DNA of 64,000 bases, taken from contig NC_043017.1 in the NCBI RefSeq assembly GCF_006345805.1, forward strand, positions 124,001 through 188,000. The letters run 5' to 3'. Source of the stretch: Octopus sinensis. Its lineage: Eukaryota. The notes beneath the pieces are model-generated. The model ran no database searches. It was not told where the DNA came from and saw only the letters and a program-made list of their open reading frames with translations. Of this stretch, positions 1-58,003 are shown piece by piece (position 1 is the stretch's first letter; the number at the start of each line of letters is the position of its first letter). The position numbers and the translations under genes were made by a program.

Positions 1-930
1 TAGGTGAAGGATGAGTTGATTACATCGACCCCAGTGTTCAACTGGTACTTATTTTATTGACTCTGAAAGAATGGAAAGCAAAGTTGATCTCTATGGAGTT
101 TGAACTCAGAATGTAGTGACAGGCAAAATAGCATTAAGTATTTTGTCTGGTACTCTAATGATTCTGCCAGCTCACTGCCTTGAAAAAAAAAAAAATAATA
201 ATAATAACTGCCCTGATGCAGTATCAGGCAGTGGCCCTCAAGGTTGAACTGGTTGGAAGTATTATCATGTACATGATTTGTCTTGGTGTAAAGGACTGGC
301 AACAGCAAATATTCTGCTCAATACCACAGATTTGCTTGTCAGTTGTTTGATCTTAACCAGTTGAGCATGTCCCTTAGAGGCTGACAATATGTGCATCTCT
401 GATCATGAGCAGAATTAATGGGGTAATATCGGTGGAAGTTGAAGTCAGAATGTGAAGACAGACGAAACACTGTAAAGCATTTTGCCTGGCAAGCTAATGA
501 TTCTGCCAAGTCACCACCTTAATGAGAGTAAAAATAATAATAATAATTCTCTCTAATTCTAGCTCAAGACTGGCAACTTTTGTTTAGGGAAGGGGCTTAG
601 TTGATTCCATGGAATGAAAATGGTACATATTTTATTCTCTTCTACTCTAGGCACAAGGCCTGAAATTTTTGAGGAGGGGGCTAGTCGATTAGATTGACCC
701 CAGTATGCAACTGGTACTTGATTTATTAACCCCGAAAGGATGAAAAGCAAAGTTGACCTCAGCAGAATTTGAACTCAGACAATAGAGACAGACGAAATGC
801 TGCTAAGCATTTCGCCCGGTGTGCTAATGTTTCTGCCAGCTCACCACCTTTTGGTACTTATTTTATTGACCCTGAAAAAAAGGAAAAGGCAAATTCAACC
901 TCAGCAGCCCCTGAACTCAGAACGTAAACC
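1..930 (-). mobile_element. Cluster of about 4 full/partial copies of tRNA-derived SINE family 2 separated by (TAA)n
   Basis: Repeated block gattacatcgaccccagt...ggtacttattttattgac...aaagttgacctc...gaatttgaactcagaa...ctgccagctcac at about 1-181, 430-520, 640-850 and 855-930. The minus strand gives A-box/B-box-like motifs (GAGTTCAAATTC). Confidence 0.8.
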
Positions 931-4842: not shown

Positions 4843-4895
4843 GTGTATGTGTGTGTGTGTGTGTGTGTAAATGTGTGTATATAGATATGTGTGTT

Positions 4896-4949
<54 letters not shown>

Positions 4950-4954
4950 CACAT

Positions 4955-6849
4955 AACTACAAGGGTATTAAACTGTTGGATCAGGTGATGAAGGTCACAG
5001 AGAGGGTCATAGCCCATCTCGTTAGGGAGAGAGTTTGCTTAGATGAGACGCAGTTTGGTTTTGTGCTGGGTAGAAGCACCACTGATGCCATATTCCTGGT
5101 TCGACAACTGCAGGAGAAATACCTAGCTAAAGATAAACTCCTCTACATAGCTTTCGTGGACTTGGAGAAAGCCTTTGACAGGGTCCCCCGATCCCTTATC
5201 TGGTGGGCGATGCAGAAACTGGAGATTGACGAATGGTTAATAAGGGCTGTACAGGCCCTATACAGAGATGCCATCAGCAAGGTTAGAATTGGCAATGAGT
5301 ATAGTGAAGAATTCCGGGTAGAGGTAGGGATCCACCAAGGTTTGGCCCTCAGTCCCCTTTTATTCATCATAGTCCTCCAGGCAATAATAGAGGAATTCAA
5401 GACGGGTTGCCTCTGAAAGCTCCTCTATGCTGATGACCTGGCCCTCATAGCTGAATCACTACTGGAACTAGAAAAGAAATGTCGGGTGTGGAAGCTAGGT
5501 TTAGAATCAAAAGGCCTCAGAGTAAATGTAGCAAAGACCAAAGTTATAGTAAGTAGGAAGGCAAACACATCACACACCCCTTCAGGTAGGTGGCTCTGCT
5601 CGATCTGTAGAAAAGGTGCAGCACCATCAAAGGAAAATTAACTGAGAAGATAGCTTTTGTGTGCGGCAGATGCACTGGGGCAATAGACACCACGGATACT
5701 CAGAAAACAGATTCCATCACACTCCAGGGGAAGAAACTAGAAGTAGTTGATAGTTTCCACTACCTAGGCGACCAAGTTAGTAGTGGGGATGGATGCTCAG
5801 AGAGTATTATCACTAGAATAAGAATAGCCTGGGCAAACTTTAGAAAGCTCCTACCCCTACTGGTGACAAAGGGTCTCTCACTTAGAGTGAAAGGTAAATT
5901 GTACGACATATGTGTGCAAACTGCCATGCTTCACAGTAGTGAAACATGGGCTGTGACTGCAGAGGACATGCGAAGGCTTGAAAGAAATGAAGCTAGCATG
6001 ATCTGCTGGATGTGTAATGTCAGTGTGCATACACGACAGAGTGTAAGAGCCCTGAGAGAAATGCTGGACATAAGAAGCATTGGATGTGGCGTGCAAGAGA
6101 GATGTTTGTGCTGGTATGGTTATGTACTACGGATGGATGAGGAGAGATGTGTGAAGAAGTGTTACTACCAAACAGTTGAAGGAATCCGGGGTAGAGGTAG
6201 ACCCAGGAAGACATGGGATGAGGCGGTCAAGAATGACCTTCGAACATTGGGTCTCACAGAGGCAATGACGAAAGGCCAAGACCTCTGGAGATATGCTGTG
6301 ACTGCAAAGACCCAACAAAGAATGTGAGTTCATGGCTGTTTCCTTCACCAGCTTCACATAGAAGCTCGGATCACAGGACGGCCTTCTGTACTTACCTTGT
6401 ATCGTAGGGTGACCTGCTGTGCTTGAGGAGACCTATTGAGTCAAGTACATCAACATCAAAAATCAAATGGAAATTGTAGCACCAGCACCAACCAAACGTA
6501 TCTGTTTCCACCCTCCCCTGGCACCTGTGCTGGTGGCACGTACAAAGCACCATCCGTACGTGGTCGATGTCAATGCTGCCTTGACTGGCTTCTGTGCCTG
6601 TGGCACGTAAAAAGCACCAACTGATCATAGCCGTTGCCAGCCTCCCCTGGTACCTGTGCTGGTGGCACATAAAATGCACCCACTACATTCACGGGGTGGT
6701 GGCGTTAGGAAGGACATCCAACTGTAGAAACACTGCCAGATCAGACTGGAGCCTGGTGCAGACTCCTGGCTTCCCAGACCCCGGTCGGACCGTCCAAACC
6801 ATGCTAGCATGGAAAACGAACGTTAAACGAAGATGATGATGAGGATGAT
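4955..6849 (+). mobile_element. 5'-truncated RTE-clade LINE (reverse transcriptase, 3'UTR, (GAT)n tail), defective
   Basis: QFGFVLGRSTTDAIF, AFVDLEKAFDRV, GIHQGLALSPLLF and LLYADDL motifs; stop at 5414-5416; internal deletion near 5618; RTE C-terminus RGRGRPRKTW; ends aacgttaaacgaagatgatgatg. It splits a family 1 SINE (tail part about 4690-4800, head part about 6985-7125). Confidence 0.92.
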
Positions 6850-8964: not shown

Positions 8965-11185
8965 TATATATGAATTTTTTGCAGAATGAGATAAAAAAAA
9001 ACCAAGGCTGTATAGATATTAGAGCATTTATAGATAGAAGGTCTTACAGCTGTTTCTAGAATATTAATTAATAATTATGCACAGTCCACCTGTGCATACC
9101 TTCCTCCTTGTGATACTTGTGAAGGCCTGTTGAGGCAAGTGGAAATCAAAGGCCTGTTGAGGCAAGTGAAAATCAAAATCAAAATCAAATCAAAACAAAT
9201 CAAAATAGATGAACATCAATGGAATTTGTATCTTTGTGGTACCAGTGCCGGTGGCACACAAGAGATAACCATCCGAAAGTGGCCGTAGCCAGTACCGCAT
9301 CGACTGGCCTCCGTTCTGTGGGCACATGACAAACACCATCCGATCGTGGCCGTTCGCCAGCCTCATCTAGCACCTGTGTCGGTGGCACATAAAAACACCA
9401 TCCGAAGACCCGGCAAGACTAGTCAGGCCATAACCCATGGCCCCTACCTGGGACGTAGTCAGTCCACCTGTGCATACCTTCCTTCTTGTGACACTTGTGA
9501 AGACTGTTGAGGCAAGTGAAAATCAAATCAAAACAAATCAAAATAGATGAACATCAATGGAATCTGTATCTTTGTGGTACCAGTGCCGGTGGCACACACT
9601 TTGTGGTACCAGTGCCGGTGGCACACATGAGAACCATCCGAACGTGGCCGTAGCCAGTTCCGCATCGACCGGCCTCCGTGCTGTGGGCACGTAACAAACA
9701 CCATCCGATCATGGCCGTTCGCCAGCCTCATCTGGCACCTGTGTCGGTGGCACATAAAAAACACCTTCCGAAGACCCGGCAAGACTAGTCAGTCCACCTG
9801 TGCATACCTTCCTTCCTTCTTGTGACACTTGTGAAGACCGGTTGAGGCAAGTGAAAATCAAATCAAATCAAATCAAAATAGACAAAATAGATGAACATCA
9901 ATGGAATTTGTATCTTGTGGTACCAGTGCCTGTGGCACACAAGAAATCCATCAGTGCCGTAGTCAGTGCGGTGGGCACATGACAAACACCATCCGATCGT
10001 GGCCGTTCGCCAGCCTCATCTAGCACCTGTGTCGGTGGCACATAAAAACACCATCCGAAGACCCGGCAAGACTAGTCAGGCCATAACCCATGGCCCCTAC
10101 CTGGGACGTAGTCAGTCCACCTGTGCATACCTTCCTTCTTGTGACACTTGTGAAGACCTGTTGAGGCAAGTGAAAATCAAATCAAATCAAAACAAATCAA
10201 AATAGATGAACATCAATGGAATTTGTATCTTTGTGGTACCAGTGCCGGTGGCACGTGGCACATAAGAAAACCATCCGAACGTGGCCGTAGCCAGTACCGC
10301 ATCGACTGGCCTCCGTGCTGTGGGCACGTAACAAGCACCATCCGATCGTGGCCGTTTGCCAGCCTCATCTGGCACCTGTGTCGGTGGCACATAAAAACAC
10401 CATCCGAGCGTGGCCGTCTGCCAGCCTCGTCTGGCACCTGTGTCGGTGGCACATAAAAACACCATCCGAGCGTGGCCGTCTGCCAGCCTCGTCTGGCACC
10501 TGTGTCGGTGGCACATAAAAACACCATCCGAGCGTGGCCGTCTGCCAGCCTCGTCTGGCACCTGTGTCGGTGGCACATAAAAACACCATCCGAGCGTGGC
10601 CGTTTGTCAGCCTCGTCTGGCACCTGTGTCGGTGGCACATAAAATCACCCACTACACTCTCGGAGTGGTTGGCGTTAGGAAGGGCATCCAGCTGTAGAAA
10701 CACTGCCAGATCTGACTGGACTGGTGCAGCTTTCGGGCTCCCCAGACCCCAGTTGAACCGTCCAACCCATGCTAGCATGGAAAGCGGACGTTAAATGATG
10801 ATGATGATGATGATGAATAATATCCCTTCATCGGAGACGGTGTGAGAGGAAAAGTTAACTCTGAGGGACTTTCGGATTTTACGCAAAGGATATTGGAATA
10901 TTACACATATATACCATTATGCCAATAAAACGGTTTTATGAACTCAATAACCATACATATCTTACATCTATTTTCTTTCCTCCACCTCACTCTCTATTTG
11001 TATCACAACGAAACTAACTATGACTTAATTTTTCCTCTCACACCATCTCCGATGAAGGGATATTATTATTATTATCTCATTACACAAAAAATTCATATAT
11101 ATATATATATATATATATATGAATTTTTTGTGTAATGAGATAAAAAAAACCAAGGCTGTATAGATATTAGAGCATTTTTAGATAT
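8965..11185. mobile_element. Penelope-like pseudo-LTR segments in alternating orientation, interrupted by an RTE 3'UTR array
   Basis: Segments homologous to 56100-56395 occur at 8985-9080 (-), 10817-10853 (-), 10886-11097 (+) and 11118-11180 (-). 34-bp inverted repeat at 10820-10853/11030-11063; hammerhead-like core CCGATGA/GAAAC. The Penelope assignment is inferred; no PLE RT or GIY-YIG ORF is visible. Confidence 0.55.
9082..10816 (+). mobile_element. RTE LINE 3'UTR with four tandem copies of a 320-380-bp block, a 62-bp unit array and (GAT)n tail
   Basis: Block starts cagtccacctgtgcatacctt at 9082, 9460, 9790 and 10113; 62-bp units at about 10330-10640; terminal aggaagggcatccagctgtagaaac...ggacgttaaatgatgatg is shared with the other RTE copies. 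Confidence 0.85.
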
Positions 11186-26672: not shown

Positions 26673-27676
26673 ATCATCATCATCATTTAGCGTCCGCTTT
26701 CCATGCTAGCATGGGTTGGACGGTTCAACTGGGGTCTGTGAAACCAGAAGGCTGCATCAGGCCCAGTCTGATCTGGCAGTGTTTCTACGGCTGGATGCCC
26801 TTCCTAACGCCAACCACTCCGTGAGTGTAGTGGGTGCTTTTTACGTGCCACCCACACAGGTGCCAGACGGAGCTGGCAAACGGCCACGCACAGATGGTGC
26901 TTTTACGTGCCACCGGCACGGGGCCAGGCGAGGCTGGCAACGGACACAAATGGATGGTGCTTTTATGTGCCACCGGCACGGAGGCCAGTCGGGGCGGCGC
27001 TGGCAACGGCTACGATCGGATGATTCGCTTAACCACAGCTGCAATTTCCATTGATGCTGATCGACTTCGATTTTGGTTCTGCTTTCTGATATCTGATTTG
27101 ATTTGGTTTGATTTTGATTTTGATTTGATTTGATTTTTACTTGTCTCAACGGGTCTTCACAAGTGAAGTTTTGTGTCCCAAGAAGGAAAGGTATGTAGGC
27201 CACAGGTTATGTTCTCACTGGTCTTGCCGGGTCTTCTCACACACAGCATACTTCCATAGGTCTCGGTCTCTAGTTATTTCCTTGGTGAGACCTAAAGTTT
27301 GAAGGTCATGCTTCACCACCTCGTCCCAGGTTTACCTCTTCCACAGGTTCCCTCAACTGCCAGGGTGTGGCACTTTCGCACACAACTATCTTCAGCCATT
27401 CTCACATGACCATACCAGCACAAACGTCTCTCTTGCACACAACAACTGATGCTTCTTAGGTTCAACTTTTCTCTCAAGGTACTTACACTCTGTCGATTAT
27501 GAACACTGACGTTACACATCCATCGGAGCATACTAGCTTCATTTCTTGCGAGCTTACGCAAATCCTCAGCAGTCACAGCCCAAGTTTCACTACCATGTAG
27601 CATGGCTGTACGTACACATGCATCATACAGTCTGCCTTTTACTTTGAGCGAGAGGCCTTTTGTCACCAGCAGGGGT
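26673..27676 (-). mobile_element. 5'-truncated RTE LINE (RT C-terminus, 3'UTR with 60-bp units, (GAT)n tail)
   Basis: PLLVTKGLSLKVKGRLYDACVRTAMLHGSETW...GRGKP is homologous to 5659-6327; (CAT)n at 26673. Confidence 0.9.
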
Positions 27677-29790
27677 ATATATATATATATACACACACAC
27701 ACACATATATATATAATATACATATGTGTATGCTTCAGTTTATATATATATAATACAAATATATATATAATGCTACATAAATAACACAAGAGCCAGTAGT
27801 TTCATGTGTAGCACTTATCAAAGTCACTTATACCTATGTATGTGCATGTGTATACACCTGTATACACACACACACACACCAACATGTTAATGACAAACAG
27901 ATATTCTATTAGCATAACAATATTTTTTGGGTGTAAAGCATTTTTAGCATAGTGCTCAATAAAGATGAAAATATATTCAGGTTTAGAGTGATAGTGTAAT
28001 GAAATATTGTTTTACTTGGTTTTAAAGGGCTTATGGGATGGATGGGGAAGTAATGGGGACATTATACACGAGCTTAAGAATGTTTAGGTGTCTTCGAAAA
28101 TATTGATATTTATTGAAGATTAACATTCGCAGAAGAGAAAAGGGTTTGAAAGAAATCCAGCTCACTCTGATAAAATTCCTGTCAAAGTGCCTGCCAAGAC
28201 TAGATTATCCAAAGTGTCCTTCCATATTGAAGATCGAATGGGGGTGATTTGCTTGCATTCATTACAAGAAACAGCTAAGTTTCTTTCTCCAATGTCTTAC
28301 ATAGTTCAACCTATTCAAGTTAACCTTTAGCACATTGTAAGTGCATCAAGTCACCACATGAGTTTTCTCCCCTGTAGTAACAGGGCAGTAGCAGGGGAAA
28401 CGATTCTAGAGAAAATGCATTGTCCCAAAAGTTAACGTTTGGAAAGCAAGATTGGAATTTTGAAAGAAGTATCTATAGATGAGTTTTTGAACATTGAGTA
28501 ATTATGGGAATCCACCAGAACAAAATAATAATCAAAAGGGTTTGTAAGTTAAAGAATGGTTGTGAACCACTAACTCTAGAAGAATGGTAACTCTATAAAA
28601 ACAACATAGAGGAGACTCTTAATTTCTGCAGCAGGCAACTTGTGCTGGTGGCACTGCTTTGATGCTGTAAAGTGGTCAGTCAGAGGAAGGGTGTCTAACC
28701 ATAGATAATGATGGATGAGATGCTGTGAAACCTGTCAAACAATATGCCATTGAGGAAAAATGAATGTAAAATCATGATGATGATAATGATGATGGTAAGT
28801 GAAAAACACTGGCTATGTATTGCAATTTATCATTATTGTCATTCTCATCATAATCACCATCAACACCATCCTCCTCATGTCATCATTATCGTTGTTATCA
28901 CCATCATCAAAGACATTATTTTCATCATTACCACCACCACCACCACCACCACCACCACCACCATCCTTGTTTTCATCATCATCATCATCATAGTCATCCC
29001 GGTTGTTGTAGTCATCATGGACAGTATCTTCATTATTACATTAATCACACCTGTCATCATCGTCATCATCATTATTTGGTTGACCCAGAGCTATAGCAGA
29101 AGACACTTGCCTAAGATGCCACGCAGTAGGACTGAACCTGAAACCATGTGGTTGGGAAGCAAACTTCTTACCACACAACTGGATCTCAGCAAGTGAATGG
29201 TTGTCTTTTTACACACTGACAACACAATATTCTATTTATATCTTAATTCTGACAAAGATTTTTTTTGAAAATGAATTAAAAATATGACTATTGTGCCTAG
29301 GGTAAATGTTTTTACCACCGCCACCACCACCATCATCATCATTTAACGTCCGTTTTTCATGCTGGCATGGGTTGGACGGTTTGACTGAAATCTGGTAGGT
29401 GCTACACCAGGTGCCAATCAGATTTGGCATGGTTTCTTCTACAGCTGGAGGCCCTTCCTAACACCAATCATTCCAAGAGTGTAGTGGGTGCTTTTCACAT
29501 GCCACCAGCATGGGTGCCAGTTATAAACCACCAGCATCAGCCACGACTATAATCTCACTTGGAGGTATTCTGAAGCTCGGTGTATTACCAAAGGTGTCGG
29601 TCACATGTTACTATCTCCATGAAGCCCAAAGTTCAAAGGGTGTTTTATTAATAAGAAAAATCATGACCCACCCCACCTCTAACCTAGTGTCTCTCATAGT
29701 GTTCCCTTAATGTTTGTCACTCCCTTGTGAGCTTACAACTCCTTTCACCCAAAGAGGTCCTATTTCTCAGGCCATGAACCTCTGCCTTAA

Positions 29791-34879: not shown

Positions 34880-36960
34880 TTTTTACCACAACAGCAACTT
34901 GGGGGAGGGGATTAAGTCGATTACATCAACCCCAGTGTGTAACCGGTACTTATTTAATCGACCTGCAAAGATGGAAAGCAAAGTCGACCTCAGCAGAATT
35001 TGAACTCACAACATAGCAACAGGCGAAATACCACTAAGCATTTCGCCCAGTGCACTAATTATTCTGCCAGCTTGCTGCCTTCAGAAATAAATGAATAATA
35101 ATAACAATGGTTTCAAATTTTGGTGCAAGGCCTGTATTTTGTGGGGTTAGGGTAAGCTGATTTCATTGACCCCAATGTTCAACTACTACTTATTTTATCA
35201 ACCCTAAAATTATGAAAGGCAAAGTCAACCTTGGCAGGATTTGAATTCAGAAGGTAAGGATGTATGAAATGCCGGTAAGTATTTAGCCAGGCATGCTAAT
35301 TATTCGGCCAGCTTGCTGCCTTAATAATGATAATTATAATAATCAAGGTCATATGCTATTTAGCCTGCTCACCTAGCCTATCAGATGGCATCGTATGAAG
35401 GCTAAAATGATGCAAAGCACATTGTGACCAGCGATGTGTAACAATATTTGATAGCCTGGTTGGTCATGTGGTCATGTGACAGGATGTGCTATTTATCTTG
35501 ATATGAGATCACCATCTCCCACACGTATAGCTCTGATGCATTTGGTTGGTGTACCCTTATCAGGCAGATGGTCATGATGGAGACATTGGGATTCATATAT
35601 TTGTAGCCTGGAGTCACTTTGATGATGTGTCCTGCTCTCTCACTCAATAATAATAGTAATAATGGTTTCAAACTTTAGCACAAGGCCAGAAATTTTAGGG
35701 GTGAGAGTAAGTTGATTACATCAACTCCAGTGATCAACTGGTACTTATTTTATTGACCCCGAAAGGGATGAAAGGCAAAGTTGACCTGGGTGGAATTTGA
35801 ACTCAGAATGTAAGGGTGTATGAAATGCCACTAAGCATTTTGCCTGGCATGCTAACGATTCTGCCAGCTCACCACCTTAAAAATAATAATGATAATAATC
35901 CTTTCTACAAAAGGTGCAAGGCCTGAAATTTTGGGGGAGGGGTAAGTCAATCACATCGACCTCAGTACTTGACTTGTACTTAATTTATCAACCCTGAAAG
36001 GATGGAAGGCAAAGTTGACCTCAACAGAATTTGAACTCAGAATATAGTGACGGGTGAAATACCTATTTCTTTACTACCCACAATGGGCTAAACATAGAGA
36101 GGACAAACAAGGACAGACAAGTGGATTAAGTCGATTATATCGACCCCAGTGCGTAACTGGTACTTAATTTATCGACCCCGAAAGGATGAAAGGCAAAGTC
36201 GACCTCGGCGGAATTTGAACTCAGAACGTAATGGCAGATGAAATACAGTTACGCATTTCACCCGGCGTGCTAACGATTCTGCCAGCTCGCCGCCTACGGG
36301 TGAAATACCGTTAAGCATTTCATCCAGTGTACTAACAACTCTGCTAGCTTGCTGCCTTAATAATAATAATAATATCCTTTTTACTATAGGTATGAGGTGT
36401 GAAATTCTGAGGGAGGAAAGTAGTTGATTACACCAACCCCAGTGCTCAGCTGGTACTTAATTTATCAACTCTGAAAGGATGAAAAGCAAAGTCGACCTCG
36501 GTGGAATTTGAACTCAGAACATAGTGATGGGCGAAATGACGACTCTGCTAGCTTGTTGCCTTCTTAATAATAATAATGATAATAATAAATAATAATAGTA
36601 ATAATAATAATGGCAGAAGGAAATTGAAATAGAATGCCTGGCAGAGCTCCTGCAGAAAGTTTGTCTCTTAGGGATAGCAAGGATTATCAGGAGGGTTCTA
36701 GAACTTGAAAGACTGCTGAAAACTTGTGGACCCCTAAGGTATCCTGCAACCCAGATAAATCCTACCAGGAATAAGACTGAACATGAGCCAAACCAAAATA
36801 ATAATAAAAATGATTTCAAGTTTTGGCACAAGGCCAGCAATTATCAGGGCATGGAATAAATCAGTTACATTGATTCCAGTTCTCAGCTCCTACTTATTTT
36901 ATCGACCCCAAAAGGATGAAAGACAAAGCTGACAATGGCAGAATTTGAACTCAAAAAGTA
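34880..36960 (-). mobile_element. Pile-up of 7 SINE family 2 copies, one nested with a 14-bp TSD
   Basis: Copies at about 34880-35082, 35105-35323, 35660-35879, 35905-36063 plus 36296-36360, 36064-36295, 36385-36565 and 36820-36960. TSD acgggtgaaatacc at 36050-36063 and 36296-36309. Confidence 0.88.
36611..36800 (+). mobile_element. R4/Dong-like LINE extreme 3' fragment in (TAA)n
   Basis: WQKEIEIECLAELLQKVCLLGIARIIRRVLE, flanked by (TAA)n on both sides, which is the known target of Dong-type elements. Confidence 0.6.
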
Positions 36961-38258
36961 AAGAAAACCTAGAGAATGGATACAACACACATGTTATTTA
37001 CCTCGACTTTGCCAAGGCATTTGACAAGGTAGATCATGGCATCCTGGGTCACAAACTTCGAAAGCTAGGAGTAGGAGGAAAAGTTGGTACATGGATACAT
37101 GAATTCCTTACAAATAGAACTCAAACAGTCACTGTGAATGGAACCCATTCAACACCATCACCTGTGACCAGCAGTGTTCCTCAGGGTACAGTACTTGGCC
37201 CAATCCTGTTTCTCATCCTCATCTCTGACATAGATGAAGATGCAACCAGCAACGTCTCATCCTTTGCTGATGACCCCAGGGTCATGAGACAAATCAAAGA
37301 CGAGGTGGATACAGAGGCCTTACAAAAGGACCCGACCACCATATATAAATGGCAGGAAACAAACAACATGTTGTTCAATGATAAGAAGTTTGAACTAATT
37401 TGCTACGGAACAGATCAAGATCTGAAAAATACAACAAACTACAGAAACCCATCAGGACAACAAATAATGGAAAAACAGTATGTGAAAGATTTAGGCATCC
37501 ACATGGGAACCAGCCTAAAATTCAGAGAACACCTTGACTCAGTCTGTCTTACCGCAAGAAAGTACAGCGGGTGGATCTTGCGCACCTTCAAATCAAGAGA
37601 TACCTCAACAATGAAAACCCTCTGGAACAGTATGATACTTCCGAGGATTGACTACTGTTCTCAGTTGTGGTCACCAACAACAAAGGGCCAACTATCTAAG
37701 ATGGAATCGCTCCAAAGAAATTTTACCTCATACTTCTCAGAAACGAGGGACCTGGACTATTGGCAAAGACTCGAAACCTTGAGGATGTACTCAATAGAAA
37801 GAAGATTTGAGCGATACCGAATTATATACATTTGGAAAATGATAGAGCAAAAGGTGCCAAACTTTGGTATCAAAACCTACCACTCACTGCGTCTCGGAAG
37901 ATGCTGCCAGCTACCACCAATCAACAAAAAGGCTGGCCAGGCAGCAAAAACCCTGTGAGAATCAAGTCTGTTGGTTCGAGGAGCACAACTATTCAACTCT
38001 ATTCCGGTACATGTCAGAAATCTATCAGGATGTAGTGTGGAAGCATTCAAATTGCAGCTGGATAGATACTTAAGCACCATTAGAGATGAACCCCATCTCC
38101 CAGGATATACACAACGAGCACAAACTGACTCAAACTCGCTCCTACACATGTCAAAATTAAGCAGAGAATACAACCTGGCAACCACACCAGACTCTGAGGG
38201 TGGAGTCTTCGACTTGGCCTGAGCATGGACTCAAACTCAAATGAAATGAAATGAAATG
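36960..38258 (+). mobile_element. 5'-truncated CR1-group LINE (RT domain), nested in a family 2 SINE
   Basis: YLDFAKAFDKVDH, SVPQGTVLGPILF, FADD, VKDLGI and IDYCSQLWSP motifs; frameshift near 37958; (AAATG)n tail at 38238-38258. The host SINE resumes at about 38275-38312. Confidence 0.92.
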
Positions 38259-38727
38259 GACAAGATGCAATTAAGTCTGGCGTGCTAACGGCTCTGCCAC
38301 CTCACTACCTTGACAACAACAACCACAACTATAATAATGGTTTCTAATACAGGCAAAATGTTTGTAATTTTTACTGAAAGGGGTGGTGGGGGGCTAGATA
38401 GTGCCATCGATCCTAGTATTTGACAAAAGTGGTATCATTTAGTTTCCACAGAGGCATCAAATGAAGAGGACATTACAAAAACATGAATGTGGTTGCAAGT
38501 GAGGTTGTGTATGAATGTAGTTGTGTGTGAGTGTGGTTGTGAGTGAGTGTGGTTGTGAGTGAGTGTGTGGAGGTGGATTGTGCCAAACAGGATGAGAAAG
38601 AAAGAGAAGAAAAGAATGAAATAAAAAAAAAGTAGTTTTAAACACAAAATTTGTAAACAGAAAAGGAAATAAAAATGTATGAATGAATCCATGAATAAAT
38701 AAATATATATGTTTGATTAAAAATGTA

Positions 38728-41700
38728 GATAGAGCAAGAGAGGATGAGAGAGAGGGAAAGAGAGATGATGAGAGCAACAGAGGATGAGAGAGAGGGAGGA
38801 TGAGAGTGAGAGAGGATGAGAGAGAGGGAAAGAGAGATGATGAGAGTGAGAGAGGATGAGAGAGGGAAAGAGAGAGGATGAGAGTGAGAGAGGATGAGAG
38901 AGAGGGAAAGAGAGAGGATGAGAGTGAGAGAGGATGAGAGAGAGGGAAAGAGAGAGGATGAGAGTGAGAGAGGATGAGAGAGGGAAAGAGAGAGGATGAG
39001 AGAGAGGGAAAGAGAGAGGATGAGAGAGAGAGAGGATGAGAGTGAGAGAGATGAGAGTGAGAGAGGATGAGAGTGAGAGAGGATGAGAGTGAGAGAGGAT
39101 GAGAGCGAGAGAGGATGAGAGCGAGAGAGGATGAGAGAGAGGGAAAGAGAGATGATGAGAGTGAGAGAGGATGTGAGAGAGGGAAAGAGAGTATGAGAGT
39201 GAGAGAGGATGAGAGAGAGGGAAAGAGAGGATGAGAGCGAGAGAGGATGAGAGAGAGGGAAAGAGAGGGAAAGAGAGATGATGAGAGTGAGAGAGGATGA
39301 GAGAGAGGGAAAGAGAGATGATGAGAGTGAGAGAGGATGAGAGAGAGGGAAAGAGAGATGATGAGAGCGAGAGAGGATGAGAGAGAGGGAAAGAGAGATG
39401 ATGAGAGTGAGAGAGGATGTGAGAGAGAGAGGATGTGAGAGAGGGAAAGAGAGAGGATGAGAGAGAGGGAAAGAGAGATGATGAGAGTGAGAGAGGATGA
39501 GAGAGAGGGAAAGAGAGAGGATGAGAGTGAGAGAGGATGAGAGAGAGGGAAAGAGAGATGATGAGAGTGAGAGAGGATGAGAGAGAGGGAAAGAGAGAGG
39601 ATGAGAGTGAGAGAGGATGAGAGAGAGGGAAAGAGAGATGATGAGAGTGAGAGAGGATGAGAGAGAGGGAAAGAGAGAGGATGAGAGTGAGAGAGGATGA
39701 GAGAGAGAGAAAGAGAGAGGATGAGCGAGAGAGGATGAGAGAGAGGAAAGAGAGAGGATGAGAGCGAGAGAGGATGAGAGAGGAGGGAAAGAGAGAGATG
39801 AGAGCGAGAGAGGATGAGAGAGAGAAAGAGAGAGGATGAGAAGCGAGAGAGATGAGAGAGAGGGAAAGAGAGAGATGAGAGCGAGAGAGAGGATGAGATG
39901 AGAGAGAGGGAAGAGAGATGATGAGAGTGAGAGAGGATGAGAGAGAGGAAAGAGAGAGATGAGGGAAGAGAGAGGATGAGAGTGAGAGAGGATGAGAGTG
40001 AGAGAGATGAGAGAGAGAGGGAAAGAGAGAGGATGAGAGCGAGAGAGGATGAGAGAGAGAGGGAAAGAGAGAGGATGAGAGCGAGAGAGGATAGAGAGAG
40101 GGAAAGAGAGATGATGAGAGCGAGAGAGGATGAGAGAGAGGGAAAGAGAGAGGATGAGAGCGAGAGAGGATGAGAGAGAGGGAAAGAGCGAGAGAGGATG
40201 AGAGAGAGGGAAAGAGCGAGAGAGGATGAGAGAGAGGGAAAGAGAGAGGATGAGAAGCGAGAGAGGATGAGAGTGAGGAGGATGAGAGAGAGGAAAGAGA
40301 GAGGATGAGAGTGGAGAGAGGATGAAGAGAGGGAAAGAGAGAGGATGAGAGTGAGAGAGGATGAGAGTGAGAGAGGATGAGAGAGAGGGAAAAGAGAGGA
40401 TGAGAGCGAGAGAGGAGAGAGAGAGGGAAAGAGAGAGGAAGAGAGAGGATGAGAGTGAGAGAGATGAGAGTGAGAGAGGATGAGAGAGAGGGAAAGAGAG
40501 AGGAGATGAGAGAGGATGAAGAGTGAGAGAGGATGAGAGAGAGGGAAAAGAGAGGAGGATGAGAGCGAGAGAGGATGAGAGAGAGGGAAAGAGAGAGGAT
40601 GAGAGCGAGAGAGGATGAGAGAGAGGGAAAGAGAGAGGATGAGAGTGAGAGAGGATGAGAGAGAGGGAAAGAGAGAGGATGAGAGTGAGAGAGGATGAGA
40701 GTGAGAGAGGATGAGAGAGAGGGAAAGAGAGAGGATGAGAGCGAGAGAGAGGATGAGAGAGAGGGAAAGAGAGAGGATGAGAGCGAGAGAGGATGAGAGA
40801 GAGGGAAAGAGAGAGGATGAGAGTGAGAGAGGATGAGAGAGAGGGAAAGAGAGAGGATGAGAGTGAGAGAGAGAGAGTGAGAGAGGATGAGAGGAGGGAA
40901 AGAGAGAGGATGAGAGCGAGAGAGGATGAGAGAGAGGGAAGAGAGATGATGAGAGCGAGAGAGGATAGAGAGAGGGAAAGAGAGAGATGAGAGCGAGAGA
41001 GGATGAGAGAGAGGGAAAGAGAGAGGATGAGAGCGAGAGGGATGAGAGGATGAGAGAGAGGGAAAGAAAGAGAGGATGAGAGCGAGAGAGGATGAGAGAG
41101 AGGGAAAGAGAGATGATGAGAGCGAGAGAGGATGAGAGAGAGGAAGAGAGAGGATGAGAGCGAGAGGATGAGAGGAGGGAAAGAGAGAGGATGAGAGTGA
41201 GAGAGGATGAGAGAGAGGGAAAGAAGAGGATGAGAGAGAGGGAAAGAGAGAGGATGAGAGTGAGAGAGGATGAGAGAGAGGGAAAAGAGAGTGAGAGAGA
41301 TGAGAGAGAGGGAAGAGAGAGGGAAGAGAGAGGGAAAAGAGAGGGAAAGAGAGAGGATGAGAGTGAGAGAGGATGAGAGAGAGGGAAAGAGAGAGGAGAG
41401 AGAGGATGAGAGTGAGAGAGGATGAGAAGAGGGAAAGAGAGATGATGAGAGTGGAGAGGATGAGAGAGAGAGGGAAAAGAGAGGATGAGAGAGAGGATGA
41501 GAGAGGATGAGAGAGAGGGAAGAGAGATGATGAGAGTGAGAGAGGATGAGAGAGAGGAAAGAGAGATGATGAGTGAGAGAGGATGAGAGAGAGGGAAAGA
41601 GAGATGATGAAGTGAGAGAGGATGAGAGAGAGGAAAGAGAGATGATGAGAGTGAGAGAGGATGAGAGAGGGAAAGAGAGATGATGAGAGTGAGAGAGGAT

Positions 41701-43213
41701 GAGAGAGAGGGAAAGAGAGATGATGAGATCGAGAGAGGAGATGAGAGAGAGGGAAAGAGAGATGATGAGATCGAGAGAGGATGAGAGAGAGGGAAAGAGA
41801 GATGATGAGAGCGAGAGAGGATGAGAGAGAGGGAAAGAGAGATGATGAGAGTGAGAGAGGATGAGAGAGAGGGAAAGAGAGATGATGAGAGTGAGAGAGG
41901 ATGAGAGAGAGGGAAAGAGAGATGATGAGAGCGAGAGAGGATGAGATAGAGGGAAAGAGAGATGATGAGAGTGAGAGAGGATGTGGAGAGGGAAAGAGAG
42001 ATGATGAGAGCGAGAGAGGATGAGATAGAGGGAAAGAGAGATGATGAGAGTGAGAGAGGATGTGAGAGAGGGAAAGAGAGATGATGAGAGTGAGAGAGGA
42101 TGTGAGAGAGGGAAAGAGAGAGGATGAGAGCAAGAGAGGATGAGAGAGAGGAAAAGAGAGATGATGAGAGTGAGAGAGGATGAGAGAGAGGGAAAGAGAG
42201 AGGGAAAGAGAGAGGATGAGAGTGAGAGAGGATGAGAGAGAGGGAAAGAGAGATGATGAGAGTGAGAGAGAATGAGAGAGAGGGAAAGAGAGTTGATGAG
42301 AGTGAGAGAGGATGAGAGAGAGGGAAAGAGAGAGGATGAGAGCAAGAGAGGATGAGAGAGAGGGAAAGAGAGAGGATGAGAGTGAGAGAGGATGAGAGAG
42401 AGGGAAAGAGAGATGATGAGAGTGAGAGAGGATGAGAGAGAGGGAAAGAGAGATGATGAGAGTGAGAGAGGATGAGAGAGAGGGAAAGAGAGATGATGAG
42501 AGTGAGAGAGGATGAGAGAGAGGGAAAGAGAGATGATGAGAGTGAGAGAGGATGAGAGAGAGGGAAAGAGAGAGGATGAGAGTGAGAGAGGATGAGAGAG
42601 AGGGAAAGAGAGAGGGTGAGAGAGGATGAGAGAGAGGGAAAGAGAGAGGGTGAGAGAGGGTGAGAGAGAGGGAAAGAGAGAGGATGAGAGCAAGAGAGGA
42701 TGAGAGCAAGAGAGGATGAGAGCAAGAGAGGATGAGAGAGAGGGAAAGAGAGATGATGAGAGTGAGAGAGGATGAGAGAGAGGGAAAGAGAGAGGATGAG
42801 AGCAAGAGAGGATGAGAGAGAGGGAAAGAGAGAGGATGAGAGTGAGAGAGGATGAGAGAGAGGGAAAGAGAGATGATGAGAGTGAGAGAGGATGAGAGAG
42901 AGGGAAAGAGAGAGGATGAGAGTGAGAGAGGATGAGAGAGAGGGAAAGAGAGATGATGAGAGTGAGAGAGGTTGAGAGAGAGGGAAAGAGAGAGGATGAG
43001 AGCAAGAGAGGATGAGAGAGAGGGAAAGAGAGAGGATGAGAGCAAGAGAGGATGAGAGAGAGGGAAAGAGATAGGATGAGAGCAAGAGAGGATGTGAGAG
43101 AGGGAAAGAGAGAGGATGAGAGCAAGAGAGGATGTGAGAGAGGGAAAGAGAGAGGATGAGAGCAAGAGAGGATGAGAGAGAGGGAAAGAGAGAGGATGAG
43201 AGTGAGAGAGGAT
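38728..43213. repeat. 4.5-kb purine-rich minisatellite, 40-bp unit AGGGAAAGAGAGA(G/T)GATGAGAG(TG/CA/CG)AGAGAGGATGAGAGAG
   Basis: An exact 40-nt period is visible at 42241-42600; the unit is itself built from GAT-GAGAG subunits. Confidence 0.95.
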
Positions 43214-43739
43214 AACACATGCATCGGTTGTATTTCCTACATGTGATGGCAGAAAAAAACAGGAAAATAGGTGGGATGGTCGTGGCTGGACTATCTTCGA
43301 TCATTGGTCAGTTTGATCTGAGATATCCTGGAGTTAAACAACAGTAGCAAACAACTGCAGCAATAAAAATGAGAACAATGACAAGAACAGCAGCAATAAC
43401 AACAGCAACAACATAAAAGACCAATAACAACAACAATACTACAATAATATCAACAGCACATACAATGACTGCAACGATAACAACAACAATACTGATAGCA
43501 GTAACAATAATAATAATAATAACAACATTATGAATATAATGACAACAATAACAACACCCACACATATAGTAATGCAAACGGTAATAACAAAGACTGCAAC
43601 GAGAACAGCAACAAGAACAACAGATATAATACCATCAACAAGAGAAATCAATAACAACAACAACTACAATATTAATAACAATAAGAGTGAAGCACAGTTT
43701 TAATATTTGATTATTTTAAATAAGGAAACAAAAGAATTG

Positions 43740-50189: not shown

Positions 50190-50670
50190 CATCCCCATCG
50201 TTTAACATCTGCTTTCCATGCTAGCATGAGTTGGATGATTTGACTGAGGCCTGGCGAACCAGATGGCTGCACCAGGCTCCAATCTTGATCTCGCAGAGTT
50301 TCTACAGCTGGATGCCCTTCCTAACGCCAACCACTCTGAGAGTGTAGTGGCTGCTTTTATGTGCCACTGGCATGAGGGCCAATCAGACGGTACTGGCAAC
50401 GGCCACATTCAAATGGTGTTTTTTACGTGCCACTTGCACAGGAGCCAGTCCAACGACACTGGCAACAACCTCGTTCGAATGTTTTTTTCACGTGCCACTG
50501 GTACAAGTGCCAGTAAGGCGATGCTAGTAATGATCATACTTGAATGGTGCTTTTTACGTGCCACTGGCACGGCAGCTGGTTAGCTGCTCAGGCAACGATC
50601 ATGCTTGGATGGTGCTCTTAGCACTCCACTAGTACAGATGCCAGTCATCGAATTCGAATTCGATTTCACT
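50190..50670 (-). mobile_element. RTE 3'UTR fragment with diverged ~60-bp units
   Basis: (CAT) tail at about 50187-50200; ggatgcccttcctaacgccaacc; repeated ttttacgtgccac. Confidence 0.75.
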
Positions 50671-54799: not shown

Positions 54800-55004
54800 A
54801 AAGTCTGTTACACATTCCATTTCCTATTTTATTAGTACTGTTACCCCAACTGCCACTACGAAGTTCCTGCAATAAATCTCTGAATAACAACAGGTGATCG
54901 AAACTGTCGGTGCTTTACTCATCATCATCCATTTTGTACAATTTCCCCATTGTGTATATATATATAATCATATATCAGAAAGCAGGGGTTAAGTGACCCA
55001 TCCG

Positions 55005-55716
55005 TTTGTGTCCGCTGGCAGCCTCGTCTGGCACCCGTGCCGGTGATACATAAAAGCACCATTCGCTCGTGGCCATTTGCCAGCTCTGCCTGGCCCCCAT
55101 GTCGGTGGCACGTAAAAGCACCGTCCGTTCGTGGCCGTTTGCCAGCTCTGTCTGGCCCCGTGTCGGTGGCACGTAAAAGCATCATCCATTCGTGTCCGTT
55201 GCCAGCATCACCTGGCCCCGTGCCGGTGACACGTAAAAGCACCATCCGTTCGTGGCCATTTGCCAGCTCTGCCTGGCCCCCATGTCGGTGGCACGTAAAA
55301 GCACCATCCGTTCATGTCCGTTGCCAGCCTCGGCTGGCCCCCGTGCCGGTGACACGTAAAAGCACCGTCCGTTCGTGGCCGTTTGCCAGCTCTGTCTGGC
55401 CCCGTGTCGGTGGCACGTAAAAGCATCATCCATTCGTGTCCGTTGCCAGCATCACCTGGCCCCGTGCCGGTGACACGTAAAAGCACCATCCGTTCGTGGC
55501 CGTTCGCCAGCTCTGTCTGGCACCTGTGCAGGTGGCACATAAAAAACACCCACTACACTCGCGGAGTGGTTGGCGTTAGGAAGGGCATCCAGCCGTAGAA
55601 ACACTGCCAGATCTGACTGGGCCTGACGAAGCCTTCCAGCTTCACAGACCCCAGTTGACCCGTCCAACCCATGCTAGCATGGAAAGCGGACGCTAAATGA
55701 TGATGATGATGATGAT
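55005..55716 (+). mobile_element. RTE 3'UTR with about 9 tandem 60-62-bp units and (GAT)n tail
   Basis: taaaa anchors at 55051, 55113, 55174, 55234, 55296, 55357, 55418, 55478 and 55540; standard RTE terminus. Confidence 0.88.
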
Positions 55717-55729
55717 ATATATATATATC

Positions 55730-55753
55730 ACCTGGTTGATCCTGCCAGTAGTC
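55730..55753 (+). rRNA. 24-nt fragment identical to the universal 5' terminus of eukaryotic 18S rRNA (not a gene)
   Basis: acctggttgatcctgccagtagtc; the match stops where 18S continues atatgc. Confidence 0.85.
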
Positions 55754-56033
55754 TTGAGCATGGTCATTGCTAGTGCTGCCGGACTGGCTCCCATGCAGGT
55801 AGCACGTAAAAACACCTTTGAGCATGGTCGTTACTAGAACCGCCTGACTGGCCCACATGCCGGTGGCACGTAAAAAAAGCACCCACTACACTCTTGGAGT
55901 GGTTGGCATTAGGAAGGGCATCCAGCTGTAGAAACTTCACCAGATTAGATTGAGCCTGGTGCAGCCTTCTGGCTCACCAGTCCTCAATCAAACCCTCCAA
56001 CCCATGGAAAGCAGACGTTAAATGATGATGAGG
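55754..56033 (+). mobile_element. 5'-truncated RTE 3'UTR copy
   Basis: Two diverged ~60-bp units, then aggaagggcatccagctgtagaaac...gacgttaaatgatgatg. Confidence 0.8.
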
Positions 56034-56099
56034 ATATATATATAACCCTTGATTCAATAACACTGAGTATAAACTCAATACTTGAAATGACTAATTTTA

Positions 56100-56395
56100 A
56101 ATTCTATTGGATTTCACTCATAAGGTATTGGAATATTATATGTATACCATTCTGCCTAAAAAAAGAGATCTACAAATGCAATATCCCTACATATTTCACA
56201 TCTATTTTCTTTTATTTTCTCCACCTCTTTCTCTATTTTATATCTTATCTAAATTGACTATTTAACCATCTTCTCACAACGTCTCCGATGAAGGGATATA
56301 ATAAATATCCTGGAAACAACTGTAAGACCTTCTATCTATAAATGTTCTAAAATCTACACAGCCTTGGTTTTTTATCTCATTACAAAATAAAAAAG
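56100..56395 (+). mobile_element. Penelope-like pseudo-LTR segment
   Basis: Homologous to 10886-11097 and to the reverse complement of 8985-9060; carries the hammerhead motif. Confidence 0.55.
56281..56328 (+). ncRNA. Putative minimal type I hammerhead ribozyme
   Basis: Stem I gtct/agac; core CCGATGA; stem II ggatat-aataa-atatcc; GAAA; stem III AC-aact-GT; predicted cleavage after GUA (56324). Confidence 0.6.
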
Positions 56396-57189: not shown

Positions 57190-58003
57190 AAGCAGGTAGT
57201 AATTTTACCTTGTACTTATTCTTAGTGCGAGTTTTGAAGAATGCAGTTCGATTTTAGCTGTTATTTTTTCAAAGCTATAATGGATGTAACAAAGGAGCAT
57301 ATTCGGCATATTTTGCTTTATGAGTTCAATAAAAGCAACAACGCAATGGAAAGTACGAGGAATATTAATGCAGTATATGGGAATCGGTCAGTAAGAGTAA
57401 GCCAGTGTCAATGGTGGTTCCAGAAATTCCAAGTAGGAAACTACAGCCTAGAAGACGAACTTTGTCCTGGAAGATCTGAAGAGCTCAACAAGGATGTCCT
57501 GCAAACCCTACTGGAACAAAATCCCATCATAACTGTTGAGGAACTAACAGAGAAGCTTGGATTTTGTCATTCAACCATTCATCAACACCTACAGGCCATC
57601 AAAAAATGACCATCTTTGGTTTCAAGATGAAAGGTGTTCTTCCATCAGGATAATGCTCGGCCACATGCAGTGAGGAGAACATTCCAAAGGCTGAAATAGT
57701 TTGAATGGGAAATGATATCCCACCCAGCGTATTTGCTGGACATTGCCCCATCTGATTATCATTTATTCCGCAGTCTTCAAAATATTTGGATGGAAAAGAT
57801 ATGAATCCTGTAGATGAGGTCAATAGTACTAGAAGAGTAATTTTCATCACAGACGAGTGAATTTTGGAAGATGGGCCTTGCAAGTCTACCAGACAGACGG
57901 AGGAGCATTGTAGTAAATGAAGATTAAAAAAGAACTTTGTTTATCTTAATTTTGAAAAGTAAAAGAAGTATAAAAAATGCATTATTTATGGGATGACCCA
58001 AAT
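57190..58003 (+). mobile_element. mariner transposon relic (internally deleted, with stops)
   Basis: N-terminal HTH MDVTKEHIRHILLYEF...QWWFQKF...LEDE..PGR; QDNARPH; HPAYLLDIAPSDYHLFRSL; right TIR gcattatttatgggatgacccaaat. Confidence 0.88.

What the first reader, a model, noticed from the sequence alone, without database searches (positions are those of the whole stretch)
55730..56033. Chimeric retrocopy: the first 24 nt of 18S rRNA fused to the 5' end of a truncated RTE
Seen: acctggttgatcctgccagtagtc, the universally conserved 18S 5' terminus, joined directly to an RTE 3'UTR fragment ending in (GAT)n, within a (TA)n context. Established: LINE RTs can switch templates to cellular RNAs (e.g. 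U6-L1 chimeras). Inference: the RTE RT jumped onto an 18S 5'-terminal fragment and copied it to its end. This would record both RTE template switching and a discrete 24-nt rRNA-derived fragment in the germline.
Basis: partly seen in the sequence, partly recalled or inferred. Interest (0 to 1): 0.7.

Follow-up and report, generated by a model that had tools for sequence, protein, structure and literature searches.

The report
18S rRNA start fused to LINE tail
A 24-base copy of the very start of 18S ribosomal RNA sits directly on the front of one truncated copy of an abundant LINE retrotransposon tail, most likely a one-off by-product of reverse transcription, and a small example of a known kind of chimera.

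Summary
ACCTGGTTGATCCTGCCAGTAGTC lies at 55730-55753 (+) and is unique in the window. It matches positions 2-25 of the Rfam eukaryotic SSU rRNA consensus exactly; position 1 is a mismatched C at 55729.

With no spacer it is followed by two 64-bp units, a conserved tail and GATGATGAGGAT (55754-56035). This is the 3' end of an abundant LINE: at least 15 other copies and 34 units in the window. Two copies, and a related metagenome contig, run upstream into a reverse-transcriptase ORF. None of the others has the 18S piece. Neither flank is rDNA, and both flanks are (AT)n.

Three features point to an RNA-level chimera made in one retrotransposition event: the sense orientation, the start at the mature 18S 5' end, and the clean junction. 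Template switching is the most likely route. RNA ligation, or a source copy sitting in an rDNA unit, cannot be excluded.

Not shown: RTE-clade membership, recurrence elsewhere in the genome, support from independent reads, or a discrete 24-nt rRNA fragment. Searches of metagenome DNA and of the protein collections found no second case.

Verdict: a new member of a known kind (chimeric LINE retrocopies), of modest interest.

The parts
54970..55716 (+). Neighbouring LINE 3'UTR copy 'A'. It is 5'-truncated, has nine 61-bp units (54998-55544), a conserved tail and (GAT)6 (55699-55716). It ends 13 nt before the 18S piece.
   Evidence: The 5' boundary is approximate (54966-54970), by comparison with the copy at 26677-27260(-).
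55717..55728 (.). (AT)6 between copy A and the chimera. It is either the 5' copy of a target-site duplication or part of a longer (AT)n target.
   Evidence: It is low-complexity, so the duplication cannot be proved. TATATATATATAA-type tracts occur 16 times in the window.
55729..55729 (+). A single C where 18S nt 1 (U/A) would be. It is an extra or mis-copied nucleotide at the 5' junction.
   Evidence: alignment (model position 1 'u' against C). Real 18S genes have T or A here.
55730..55753 (+). Copy of 18S rRNA nt 2-25 in sense orientation, 24/24 identical to the eukaryotic consensus.
55754..55876 (+). Two 64-bp tandem units of the LINE 3'UTR (83% alike). The first unit starts exactly at the junction.
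   Evidence: The unit motif GGTGGCACGTAAAA occurs 34 times in the window.
55877..56023 (+). Conserved 3'-terminal region of the LINE 3'UTR. It differs by 9% from a mixed consensus. An 8-nt deletion between two CATG repeats removes most of the palindrome CCATGCTAGCATGG found in other copies.
   Evidence: The hairpin itself is not supported by covariation.
56024..56035 (+). Microsatellite tail GATGATGAGGAT, the 3' end of the element.
   Evidence: Other copies and L021 end in (GAT)n.
56036..56045 (.). ATATATATAA 3' flank: a putative 3' copy of the target-site duplication, or the rest of the (AT)n target.
   Evidence: 4 of 12 copies are followed directly by an (AT)n run and others by TA-rich sequence.

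Best explanation
The segment 55729-56035 is one dead retrocopy made in a single target-primed reverse transcription event. The LINE's reverse transcriptase started at the (GAT)n end of a LINE 3'UTR RNA at a nicked (AT)n site and copied about 280 nt. Instead of continuing on the LINE RNA, it switched to 18S rRNA at nt 25 and ran off its 5' end. One further nucleotide (C) was added before the cDNA was joined to the target. Shown: the anatomy, the exact 18S identity, the end at the mature rRNA terminus, the sense orientation, the clean junction, and the absence of the 24-mer from all other copies here. Inferred: the single event, the template switch, and whether the acceptor was a short 5' fragment or full-length 18S. 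This copy has no known promoter in its head and has lost the 3' palindrome, so it is probably inert.
For: The 24-mer is exact, unique and not due to chance. It aligns to SSU model positions 2-25 starting at the model's 5' end. A random captured rDNA fragment would end within 1 nt of the mature terminus only about 1 time in 10^4 (inference). It has the same orientation as the LINE and no spacer. The 3' part is a genuine LINE 3'UTR: copies at 4871-6836 and 26677-27789 continue upstream into RVT_1 ORFs. Contig L021 shows RT ORF, then units, tail, (GAT)7 and ATATAT. No other copy or unit has the 24-mer. Neither the 3' flank nor the body resembles 18S beyond nt 25. Both flanks are (AT)n, as expected for an insertion with a duplicated target. 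Zero changes in 24 nt is compatible with the at most 9% divergence of the LINE part (p about 0.1). Chimeras of L1 with U6, 5S, 28S and tRNA, attributed to template switching or ligation, are documented. Extra 5' nucleotides are common at the junctions of an L2-clade LINE.
Against: This is a single locus. No second chimera, orthologous site or independent read could be examined (searches were all negative or uninformative). The target-site duplication is only (AT)n, so a single event cannot be proved, and the order of insertion relative to copy A is ambiguous. There is no clear microhomology at the junction. 18S nt 1 is not copied. Nothing separates template switching from prior RNA ligation.
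Confidence: 0.55

Rival explanations
1. RNA ligation before reverse transcription. A 5'-terminal 18S fragment of about 25 nt, for example with a 2',3'-cyclic phosphate end, was ligated to a 5'-OH fragment of LINE RNA. The ligated RNA was then copied end to end. This route has been proposed for U6/L1 chimeras (my own knowledge of that literature).
For: It gives the same anatomy as the best explanation: clean junction, sense orientation, rRNA 5' end retained. The L1 study lists 'RNA ligation or template switching' as alternatives for sense-oriented 28S/L1 chimeras.
Against: Nothing found here favours it. It needs a discrete 18S fragment ending at nt 25, which has not been shown for this organism.
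Confidence: 0.12
2. Carry-over from an rDNA-resident copy. A truncated LINE tail had inserted into an 18S gene between nt 25 and the AUAU at nt 26-29, which is an (AT)-type site of the kind this LINE uses. It was transcribed within pre-rRNA, the RNA was trimmed at the normal 18S 5' end, and the LINE enzyme then copied this RNA into the present site.
For: 18S continues with ATAT right after the break point. Four of 12 copies are followed directly by an (AT)n run. This would explain both the exact rRNA 5' end and the break point.
Against: It needs two events and reverse transcription starting at an internal (GAT)n tract. No rDNA is present in the window, and the flanks here are not rDNA.
Confidence: 0.1
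3. It belongs to a multi-copy non-autonomous family (SINE-like), or the full-length LINE consensus itself carries the 18S-derived 24-mer at its 5' end. In that case the junction is inherited and was not made at this locus.
For: rRNA-headed SINEs exist (5S- and 28S-derived, cited). Full-length 5' ends of this LINE are absent from the window, so a head at the extreme 5' end cannot be excluded.
Against: Only 1 of about 16 copies in 64 kb has it. The nearest relative (50196-50605, 86% identical over the conserved tail) continues upstream into more units and the ORF end with no 18S. The junction 27-mer is absent from metagenome contigs, and the junction ORF has no relative in the protein collection. 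No Pol III promoter is known in 18S nt 2-25 (inference). This copy has lost the 3' palindrome.
Confidence: 0.08
4. Assembly, read or primer artefact, or DNA-level filler capture of an rDNA scrap during repair.
For: The sequence overlaps widely used universal 18S primers (my own knowledge). A metagenome or metatranscriptome contig (L003) joins 18S nt 1-25 directly to LSU rRNA, which shows that artefactual joins at this point can occur in assemblies.
Against: The match runs 2-4 nt past the 3' ends of the usual primers (from memory). A 24-nt insert at a repeat junction is not a typical misassembly. Random DNA capture would not end at the mature rRNA terminus.
Confidence: 0.06

Closest known systems
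Bipartite chimeric retrocopies of LINE-1 (U6/L1, and U3, U5, 5S, 28S, tRNA, 7SL/L1)
   Same: A cellular non-coding RNA segment sits at the 5' side, in sense, fused without a spacer to a 5'-truncated LINE that keeps its 3' end. These are interpreted as template switching or RNA ligation during one TPRT event.
   Different: Here the LINE is not L1. It is an invertebrate LINE with a (GAT)n tail and an RT followed by a PHD finger. The partner is 18S rRNA, which that survey does not list (0 mentions). The captured piece is only 24 nt, against a median of 269 nt for 28S. Only one case is known here.
5' extra nucleotides at junctions of L2-clade LINEs (zebrafish ZfL2-2)
   Same: Non-element nucleotides lie between the target and a 5'-truncated LINE copy.
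   Different: Those are described as 'several' nucleotides of unassigned origin. Here 24 nt can be assigned to a specific RNA terminus.
rRNA-headed SINEs (5S-derived SINE3, 28S-derived SINE28)
   Same: An rRNA-derived 5' part combined with a LINE-derived 3' tail (cited).
   Different: Those are multi-copy families, and the 5S heads carry promoters. Here there is a single copy in the window and no known promoter in the 24 nt.
rDNA-specific LINEs (R1, R2, R7-type elements; own knowledge)
   Same: A LINE sequence abuts rRNA gene sequence.
   Different: Those lie inside rDNA units with rRNA sequence on both sides. Here only 24 nt of 18S are present, upstream is (AT)n rather than ETS, and downstream is not 18S.

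Membership tests
Chimeric LINE retrocopy (U6/L1 type) | The 5' part is a copy of a cellular RNA that reaches that RNA's own 5' end | tested here: met
   SSU model positions 2-25 are exact and the alignment starts at model position 1. Nt 1 itself is mismatched (C).
Chimeric LINE retrocopy (U6/L1 type) | The 3' part is a 5'-truncated LINE that retains its 3' terminus | tested here: met
   55754-56035 aligns to the 3'UTR end of copies that are linked to RT ORFs, and ends in the (GAT)n tail.
Chimeric LINE retrocopy (U6/L1 type) | Both parts are in the same orientation and joined without foreign sequence | tested here: met
Chimeric LINE retrocopy (U6/L1 type) | One target-site duplication flanks the whole chimera | tested here: inconclusive
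   (AT)6 upstream and ATATATATAA downstream, but (AT)n is common in the window.
Chimeric LINE retrocopy (U6/L1 type) | Independent recurrent fusions elsewhere in the genome | not testable with these tools
   The source genome is not searchable. The metagenome and protein collections gave nothing.
RTE clade of non-LTR retrotransposons | The RT domain groups phylogenetically with RTE/BovB | not tested
   Only RVT_1 was detected. Homologues carry RVT_1 and PHD and are unnamed. No reference set was available.
RTE clade of non-LTR retrotransposons | A single ORF with an N-terminal AP endonuclease | not testable with these tools
   All copies in the window, and L021, are 5'-truncated within or after the RT.
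RTE clade of non-LTR retrotransposons | The 3' end is a short tandem repeat rather than poly(A) | tested here: met
   (GAT)n tails
rRNA-headed SINE | Many copies share the same head-body junction | tested here: not met
   1 of about 16 copies in the window. The junction is absent from metagenome contigs. This is not a genome-wide test.
rRNA-headed SINE | An internal promoter in the head | not tested
   No promoter is known in 18S nt 2-25 (inference only).
rDNA-inserted LINE (R-element-like) | rRNA gene sequence on both sides of the element | tested here: not met
   The 3' flank and the body do not resemble 18S beyond nt 25. There are no rRNA matches elsewhere in the window.

The most novel reading that the evidence does not exclude
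This locus is one of many independent fusions of an 18S 5'-terminal fragment of about 25 nt to LINE tails in this genome. That would record a discrete germline 18S 5' fragment and frequent end-to-end template jumping by this LINE's reverse transcriptase. Alternatively, it founded an 18S-headed non-autonomous family.
Probability: 0.1. Interest if true: 0.55.

Novelty: new member of a known kind. Interest (0 to 1): 0.3.

Why it matters
If the single-event reading holds, this is a natural record that a non-L1 invertebrate LINE enzyme can move from its own RNA onto ribosomal RNA and copy it to the end. That is the same process thought to create new SINEs and chimeric retrogenes. One locus adds only an example. 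It would matter more if a genome-wide count showed recurrent fusions at the same 18S position, because that would point to a specific rRNA fragment present where retrotransposition happens.

Tried and rejected
- **Chance match:** rejected.
- **Fixed part of the LINE 3'UTR:** rejected for the region represented here.
- **rDNA context or an R-element-like insertion:** rejected. There are no rRNA hits at gathering or relaxed thresholds apart from the 24-mer itself, which shows only in the small-region searches, and the flanks are unlike 18S.
- **Other cellular-RNA fragments at the 5' ends of other copies:** none found. The relaxed Rfam hits are microsatellite noise.
- **Scan of metagenome contigs for the junction 27-mer:** 0 hits.
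- **Scan for the 18S 20-mer followed by non-18S sequence:** 20 loci. They were genuine 18S variants, one 18S/LSU join, and bacterial coding genes, with no LINE chimera.
- **Junction-spanning ORFs, 10 start variants:** none is in the 15-billion-protein collection. A homology search with the junction ORF found no candidate sharing three words. So no independent assembly could be reached.
- **Literature search for an 18S-derived SINE and for the repeat's sequence:** nothing relevant.
- **Conserved 3' hairpin as a recognition signal:** it is predicted in copy A and in L021, but covariation is no better than in shuffles, so it is left as a suggestion.
- **Order of insertion of copy A and the chimera, from the three (AT)n tracts:** ambiguous, because copy A's own 5' end (AATCA.ATATCAG) overlaps the tract.
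- **Microhomology at the junction** (18S GCTTGTC against LINE GCATGGTC, 4 nt downstream): judged too weak to use.

Full report
**Observation**

The 24-mer ACCTGGTTGATCCTGCCAGTAGTC is at window 55730-55753 on the + strand. It is the only match in 64 kb even with three mismatches allowed, and none of 100 dinucleotide-preserving shuffles gave a match.

Rfam's eukaryotic SSU rRNA model aligns to it from model position 1. Positions 2-25 of the consensus (ACCUGGUUGAUCCUGCCAGUAGUC) are identical to 55730-55753. Position 1 (u) faces C55729. After position 25 the alignment falls to scattered matches (E = 8e-4 in a 50-nt search).

Genuine 18S genes recovered from metagenomes carry the same 20-mer, preceded by (A/T)ACCT and spacer sequence and followed by (A)TATGCTTGTCTCAAAG. 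So the piece is 18S nt 2-25, in sense, starting within one nucleotide of the mature 5' end.

**What it is fused to**

From 55754 onward the sequence belongs to an abundant repeat. A BLAST of 55730-56033 against the window finds at least 15 other copies, none covering the first 24-27 nt of the query. The unit motif GGTGGCACGTAAAA occurs 34 times.

- The chimera has two 64-bp units (55754-55876, starting exactly at the junction).
- These are followed by a conserved region of about 150 nt and the tail GATGATGAGGAT, which ends at 56035.

The repeat is the 3' UTR of a LINE.

- The copies at 4871-6836 (+) and 26677-27789 (-) continue upstream into ORF fragments that match Pfam RVT_1.
- Homologues in the large protein collection carry RVT_1 followed by a PHD finger.
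- The best of these (64% identity) lies on an ENA metagenome contig, L021. That contig shows the same layout: end of the RT ORF, GGCACGTAAAA units, the conserved tail, (GAT)7, then ATATAT.

No endonuclease region or reference phylogeny was available, and only the microsatellite tail is in keeping with that clade.

**Surroundings**

Immediately upstream lies another copy of the same LINE tail (copy A, about 54970-55716), with nine 61-bp units and (GAT)6. Between copy A and the 18S piece are (AT)6 (55717-55728) and one C (55729). Downstream of the chimera is ATATATATAA (56036-56045).

Four of 12 copies examined are followed directly by an (AT)n run and others by TA-rich sequence. The element therefore either prefers such sites or primes on them. 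The two (AT) tracts around the chimera fit a target-site duplication. They are too simple to prove one, since such tracts are frequent in the window. The order in which copy A and the chimera arrived cannot be settled.

No rDNA is nearby. Rfam finds no rRNA at gathering thresholds and only microsatellite noise at relaxed ones. Neither the 3' flank nor the LINE body resembles 18S beyond nt 25 any more than shuffled sequence does.

**Mechanism**

Four facts constrain the origin:

- The rRNA piece begins at the mature 18S terminus. A randomly captured rDNA fragment would do so roughly once in 10^4 (inference).
- It is in the same orientation as the LINE.
- The junction has no spacer.
- The piece is absent from all other copies in the window.

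Together these point to an RNA-templated fusion made during one retrotransposition. The cDNA was primed at the (GAT)n end of a LINE 3' UTR RNA, was extended for about 280 nt, and then continued on 18S rRNA from nt 25 to its end. One extra nucleotide was added before joining to the target.

This is the pattern described for L1 chimeras with U6, 5S, 28S and tRNA, where template switching or RNA ligation is invoked. It also recalls the extra 5' nucleotides seen at junctions of an L2-clade LINE. I put template switching at about 0.55.

Three alternatives remain open:

- **Ligation before reverse transcription** gives the same product (0.12).
- **An rDNA-resident source copy** also fits (0.10). 18S continues with AUAU right after the break point, which is the kind of site this LINE uses. 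A tail inserted there, transcribed in pre-rRNA, trimmed at the 18S 5' end and then retrotransposed would give the same product.
- **An inherited head** (0.08), from a multi-copy family or the full-length LINE's own 5' end, is unlikely on the window's evidence but cannot be excluded without the genome.

An artefact is unlikely but untested (0.06).

The idea of a discrete 24-nt rRNA fragment has no support here. An internal jump explains the data equally well.

**State of the copy**

The LINE part differs by 9% from a mixed consensus of 12 copies. This is an upper bound on its age-related divergence, because subfamilies are pooled. At that rate 24 unchanged bases have a probability of about 0.1, so the intact 18S piece is not anomalous.

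The copy has an 8-nt deletion between two CATG repeats that removes most of the palindrome CCATGCTAGCATGG. In copy A and L021 this palindrome is predicted to form the inner stem of a small hairpin just before the tail. Covariation does not support the hairpin beyond shuffles, so its role in enzyme recognition is only a suggestion. With no known promoter in the head, the copy is most likely inert.

**Attempts to find a second case or independent support**

- The junction 27-mer is absent from 241 million metagenome records.
- The 18S 20-mer followed by non-18S sequence gave 20 loci. These were variant 18S genes, one contig joining 18S nt 1-25 to LSU rRNA, and bacterial coding genes that contain the 20-mer by protein conservation. 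None was a LINE chimera.
- Ten start variants of the two junction-spanning ORFs are not in the protein collection.
- A homology search with the junction ORF found no candidate.
- Literature searches found L1/28S, L1/5S and similar chimeras, but no 18S-headed SINE and no 18S/LINE chimera.

**Verdict**

The finding is a new example of a known kind of event and of modest interest unless recurrence is shown.

Noticed in passing
window 9082-10407: A higher-order tandem duplication, about 4 copies of a 290-370-bp block. Each block holds the end of the LINE ORF region plus 3'UTR units. It lies upstream of the complete tail at 10369-10816.
   Followed up: partly
window 38457-43304 (-): About 4.8 kb of highly repetitive CT/AG-rich sequence. 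All three minus-strand frames are open for about 1500 codons (LSLSSS-type peptides). It is almost certainly a satellite or minisatellite and not a gene.
   Followed up: no
window 56109-56308 and 10817-11072: The same unclassified repeat (74% identity) lies just downstream of two different LINE tails. The copy at 10817-11072 has inverted ends (10817-10850 against about 11033-11066), which suggests a MITE-like element.
   Followed up: partly
window 57241-57609 (+): An ORF with the Mos1-type transposase HTH_48 domain (E = 2e-19): a mariner-like transposon remnant.
   Followed up: partly
window 36945-37958 (+): A second, unrelated LINE reverse-transcriptase fragment (RVT_1, E = 2e-18).
   Followed up: partly
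L003 (Ga0247563_1019064) 495-523 (-): A metagenome contig in which ETS plus 18S nt 1-25 is joined directly to LSU rRNA sequence (LSU model 1-588). This is the same 18S break point as in the window. It may be a cDNA or assembly template-switch artefact.
   Followed up: partly
L006, L008, L010, L011, L014, L015, L017, L019, L020: The 20-mer GGTTGATCCTGCCAGTAGTC also occurs inside what look like related bacterial coding sequences, apparently because of a conserved peptide (DYWQDQ on the opposite strand). The 20-mer alone is therefore not specific for 18S in metagenomes.
   Followed up: no
window 55650-55716; L021 1960-2028: The conserved palindrome CCATGC(T/C)(A/T)GCATGG, nested in CGUCC...GGACG just before the (GAT)n tail, folds the same way in copies about 20% diverged. 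It may be the recognition hairpin for the LINE enzyme, but covariation is inconclusive.
   Followed up: partly
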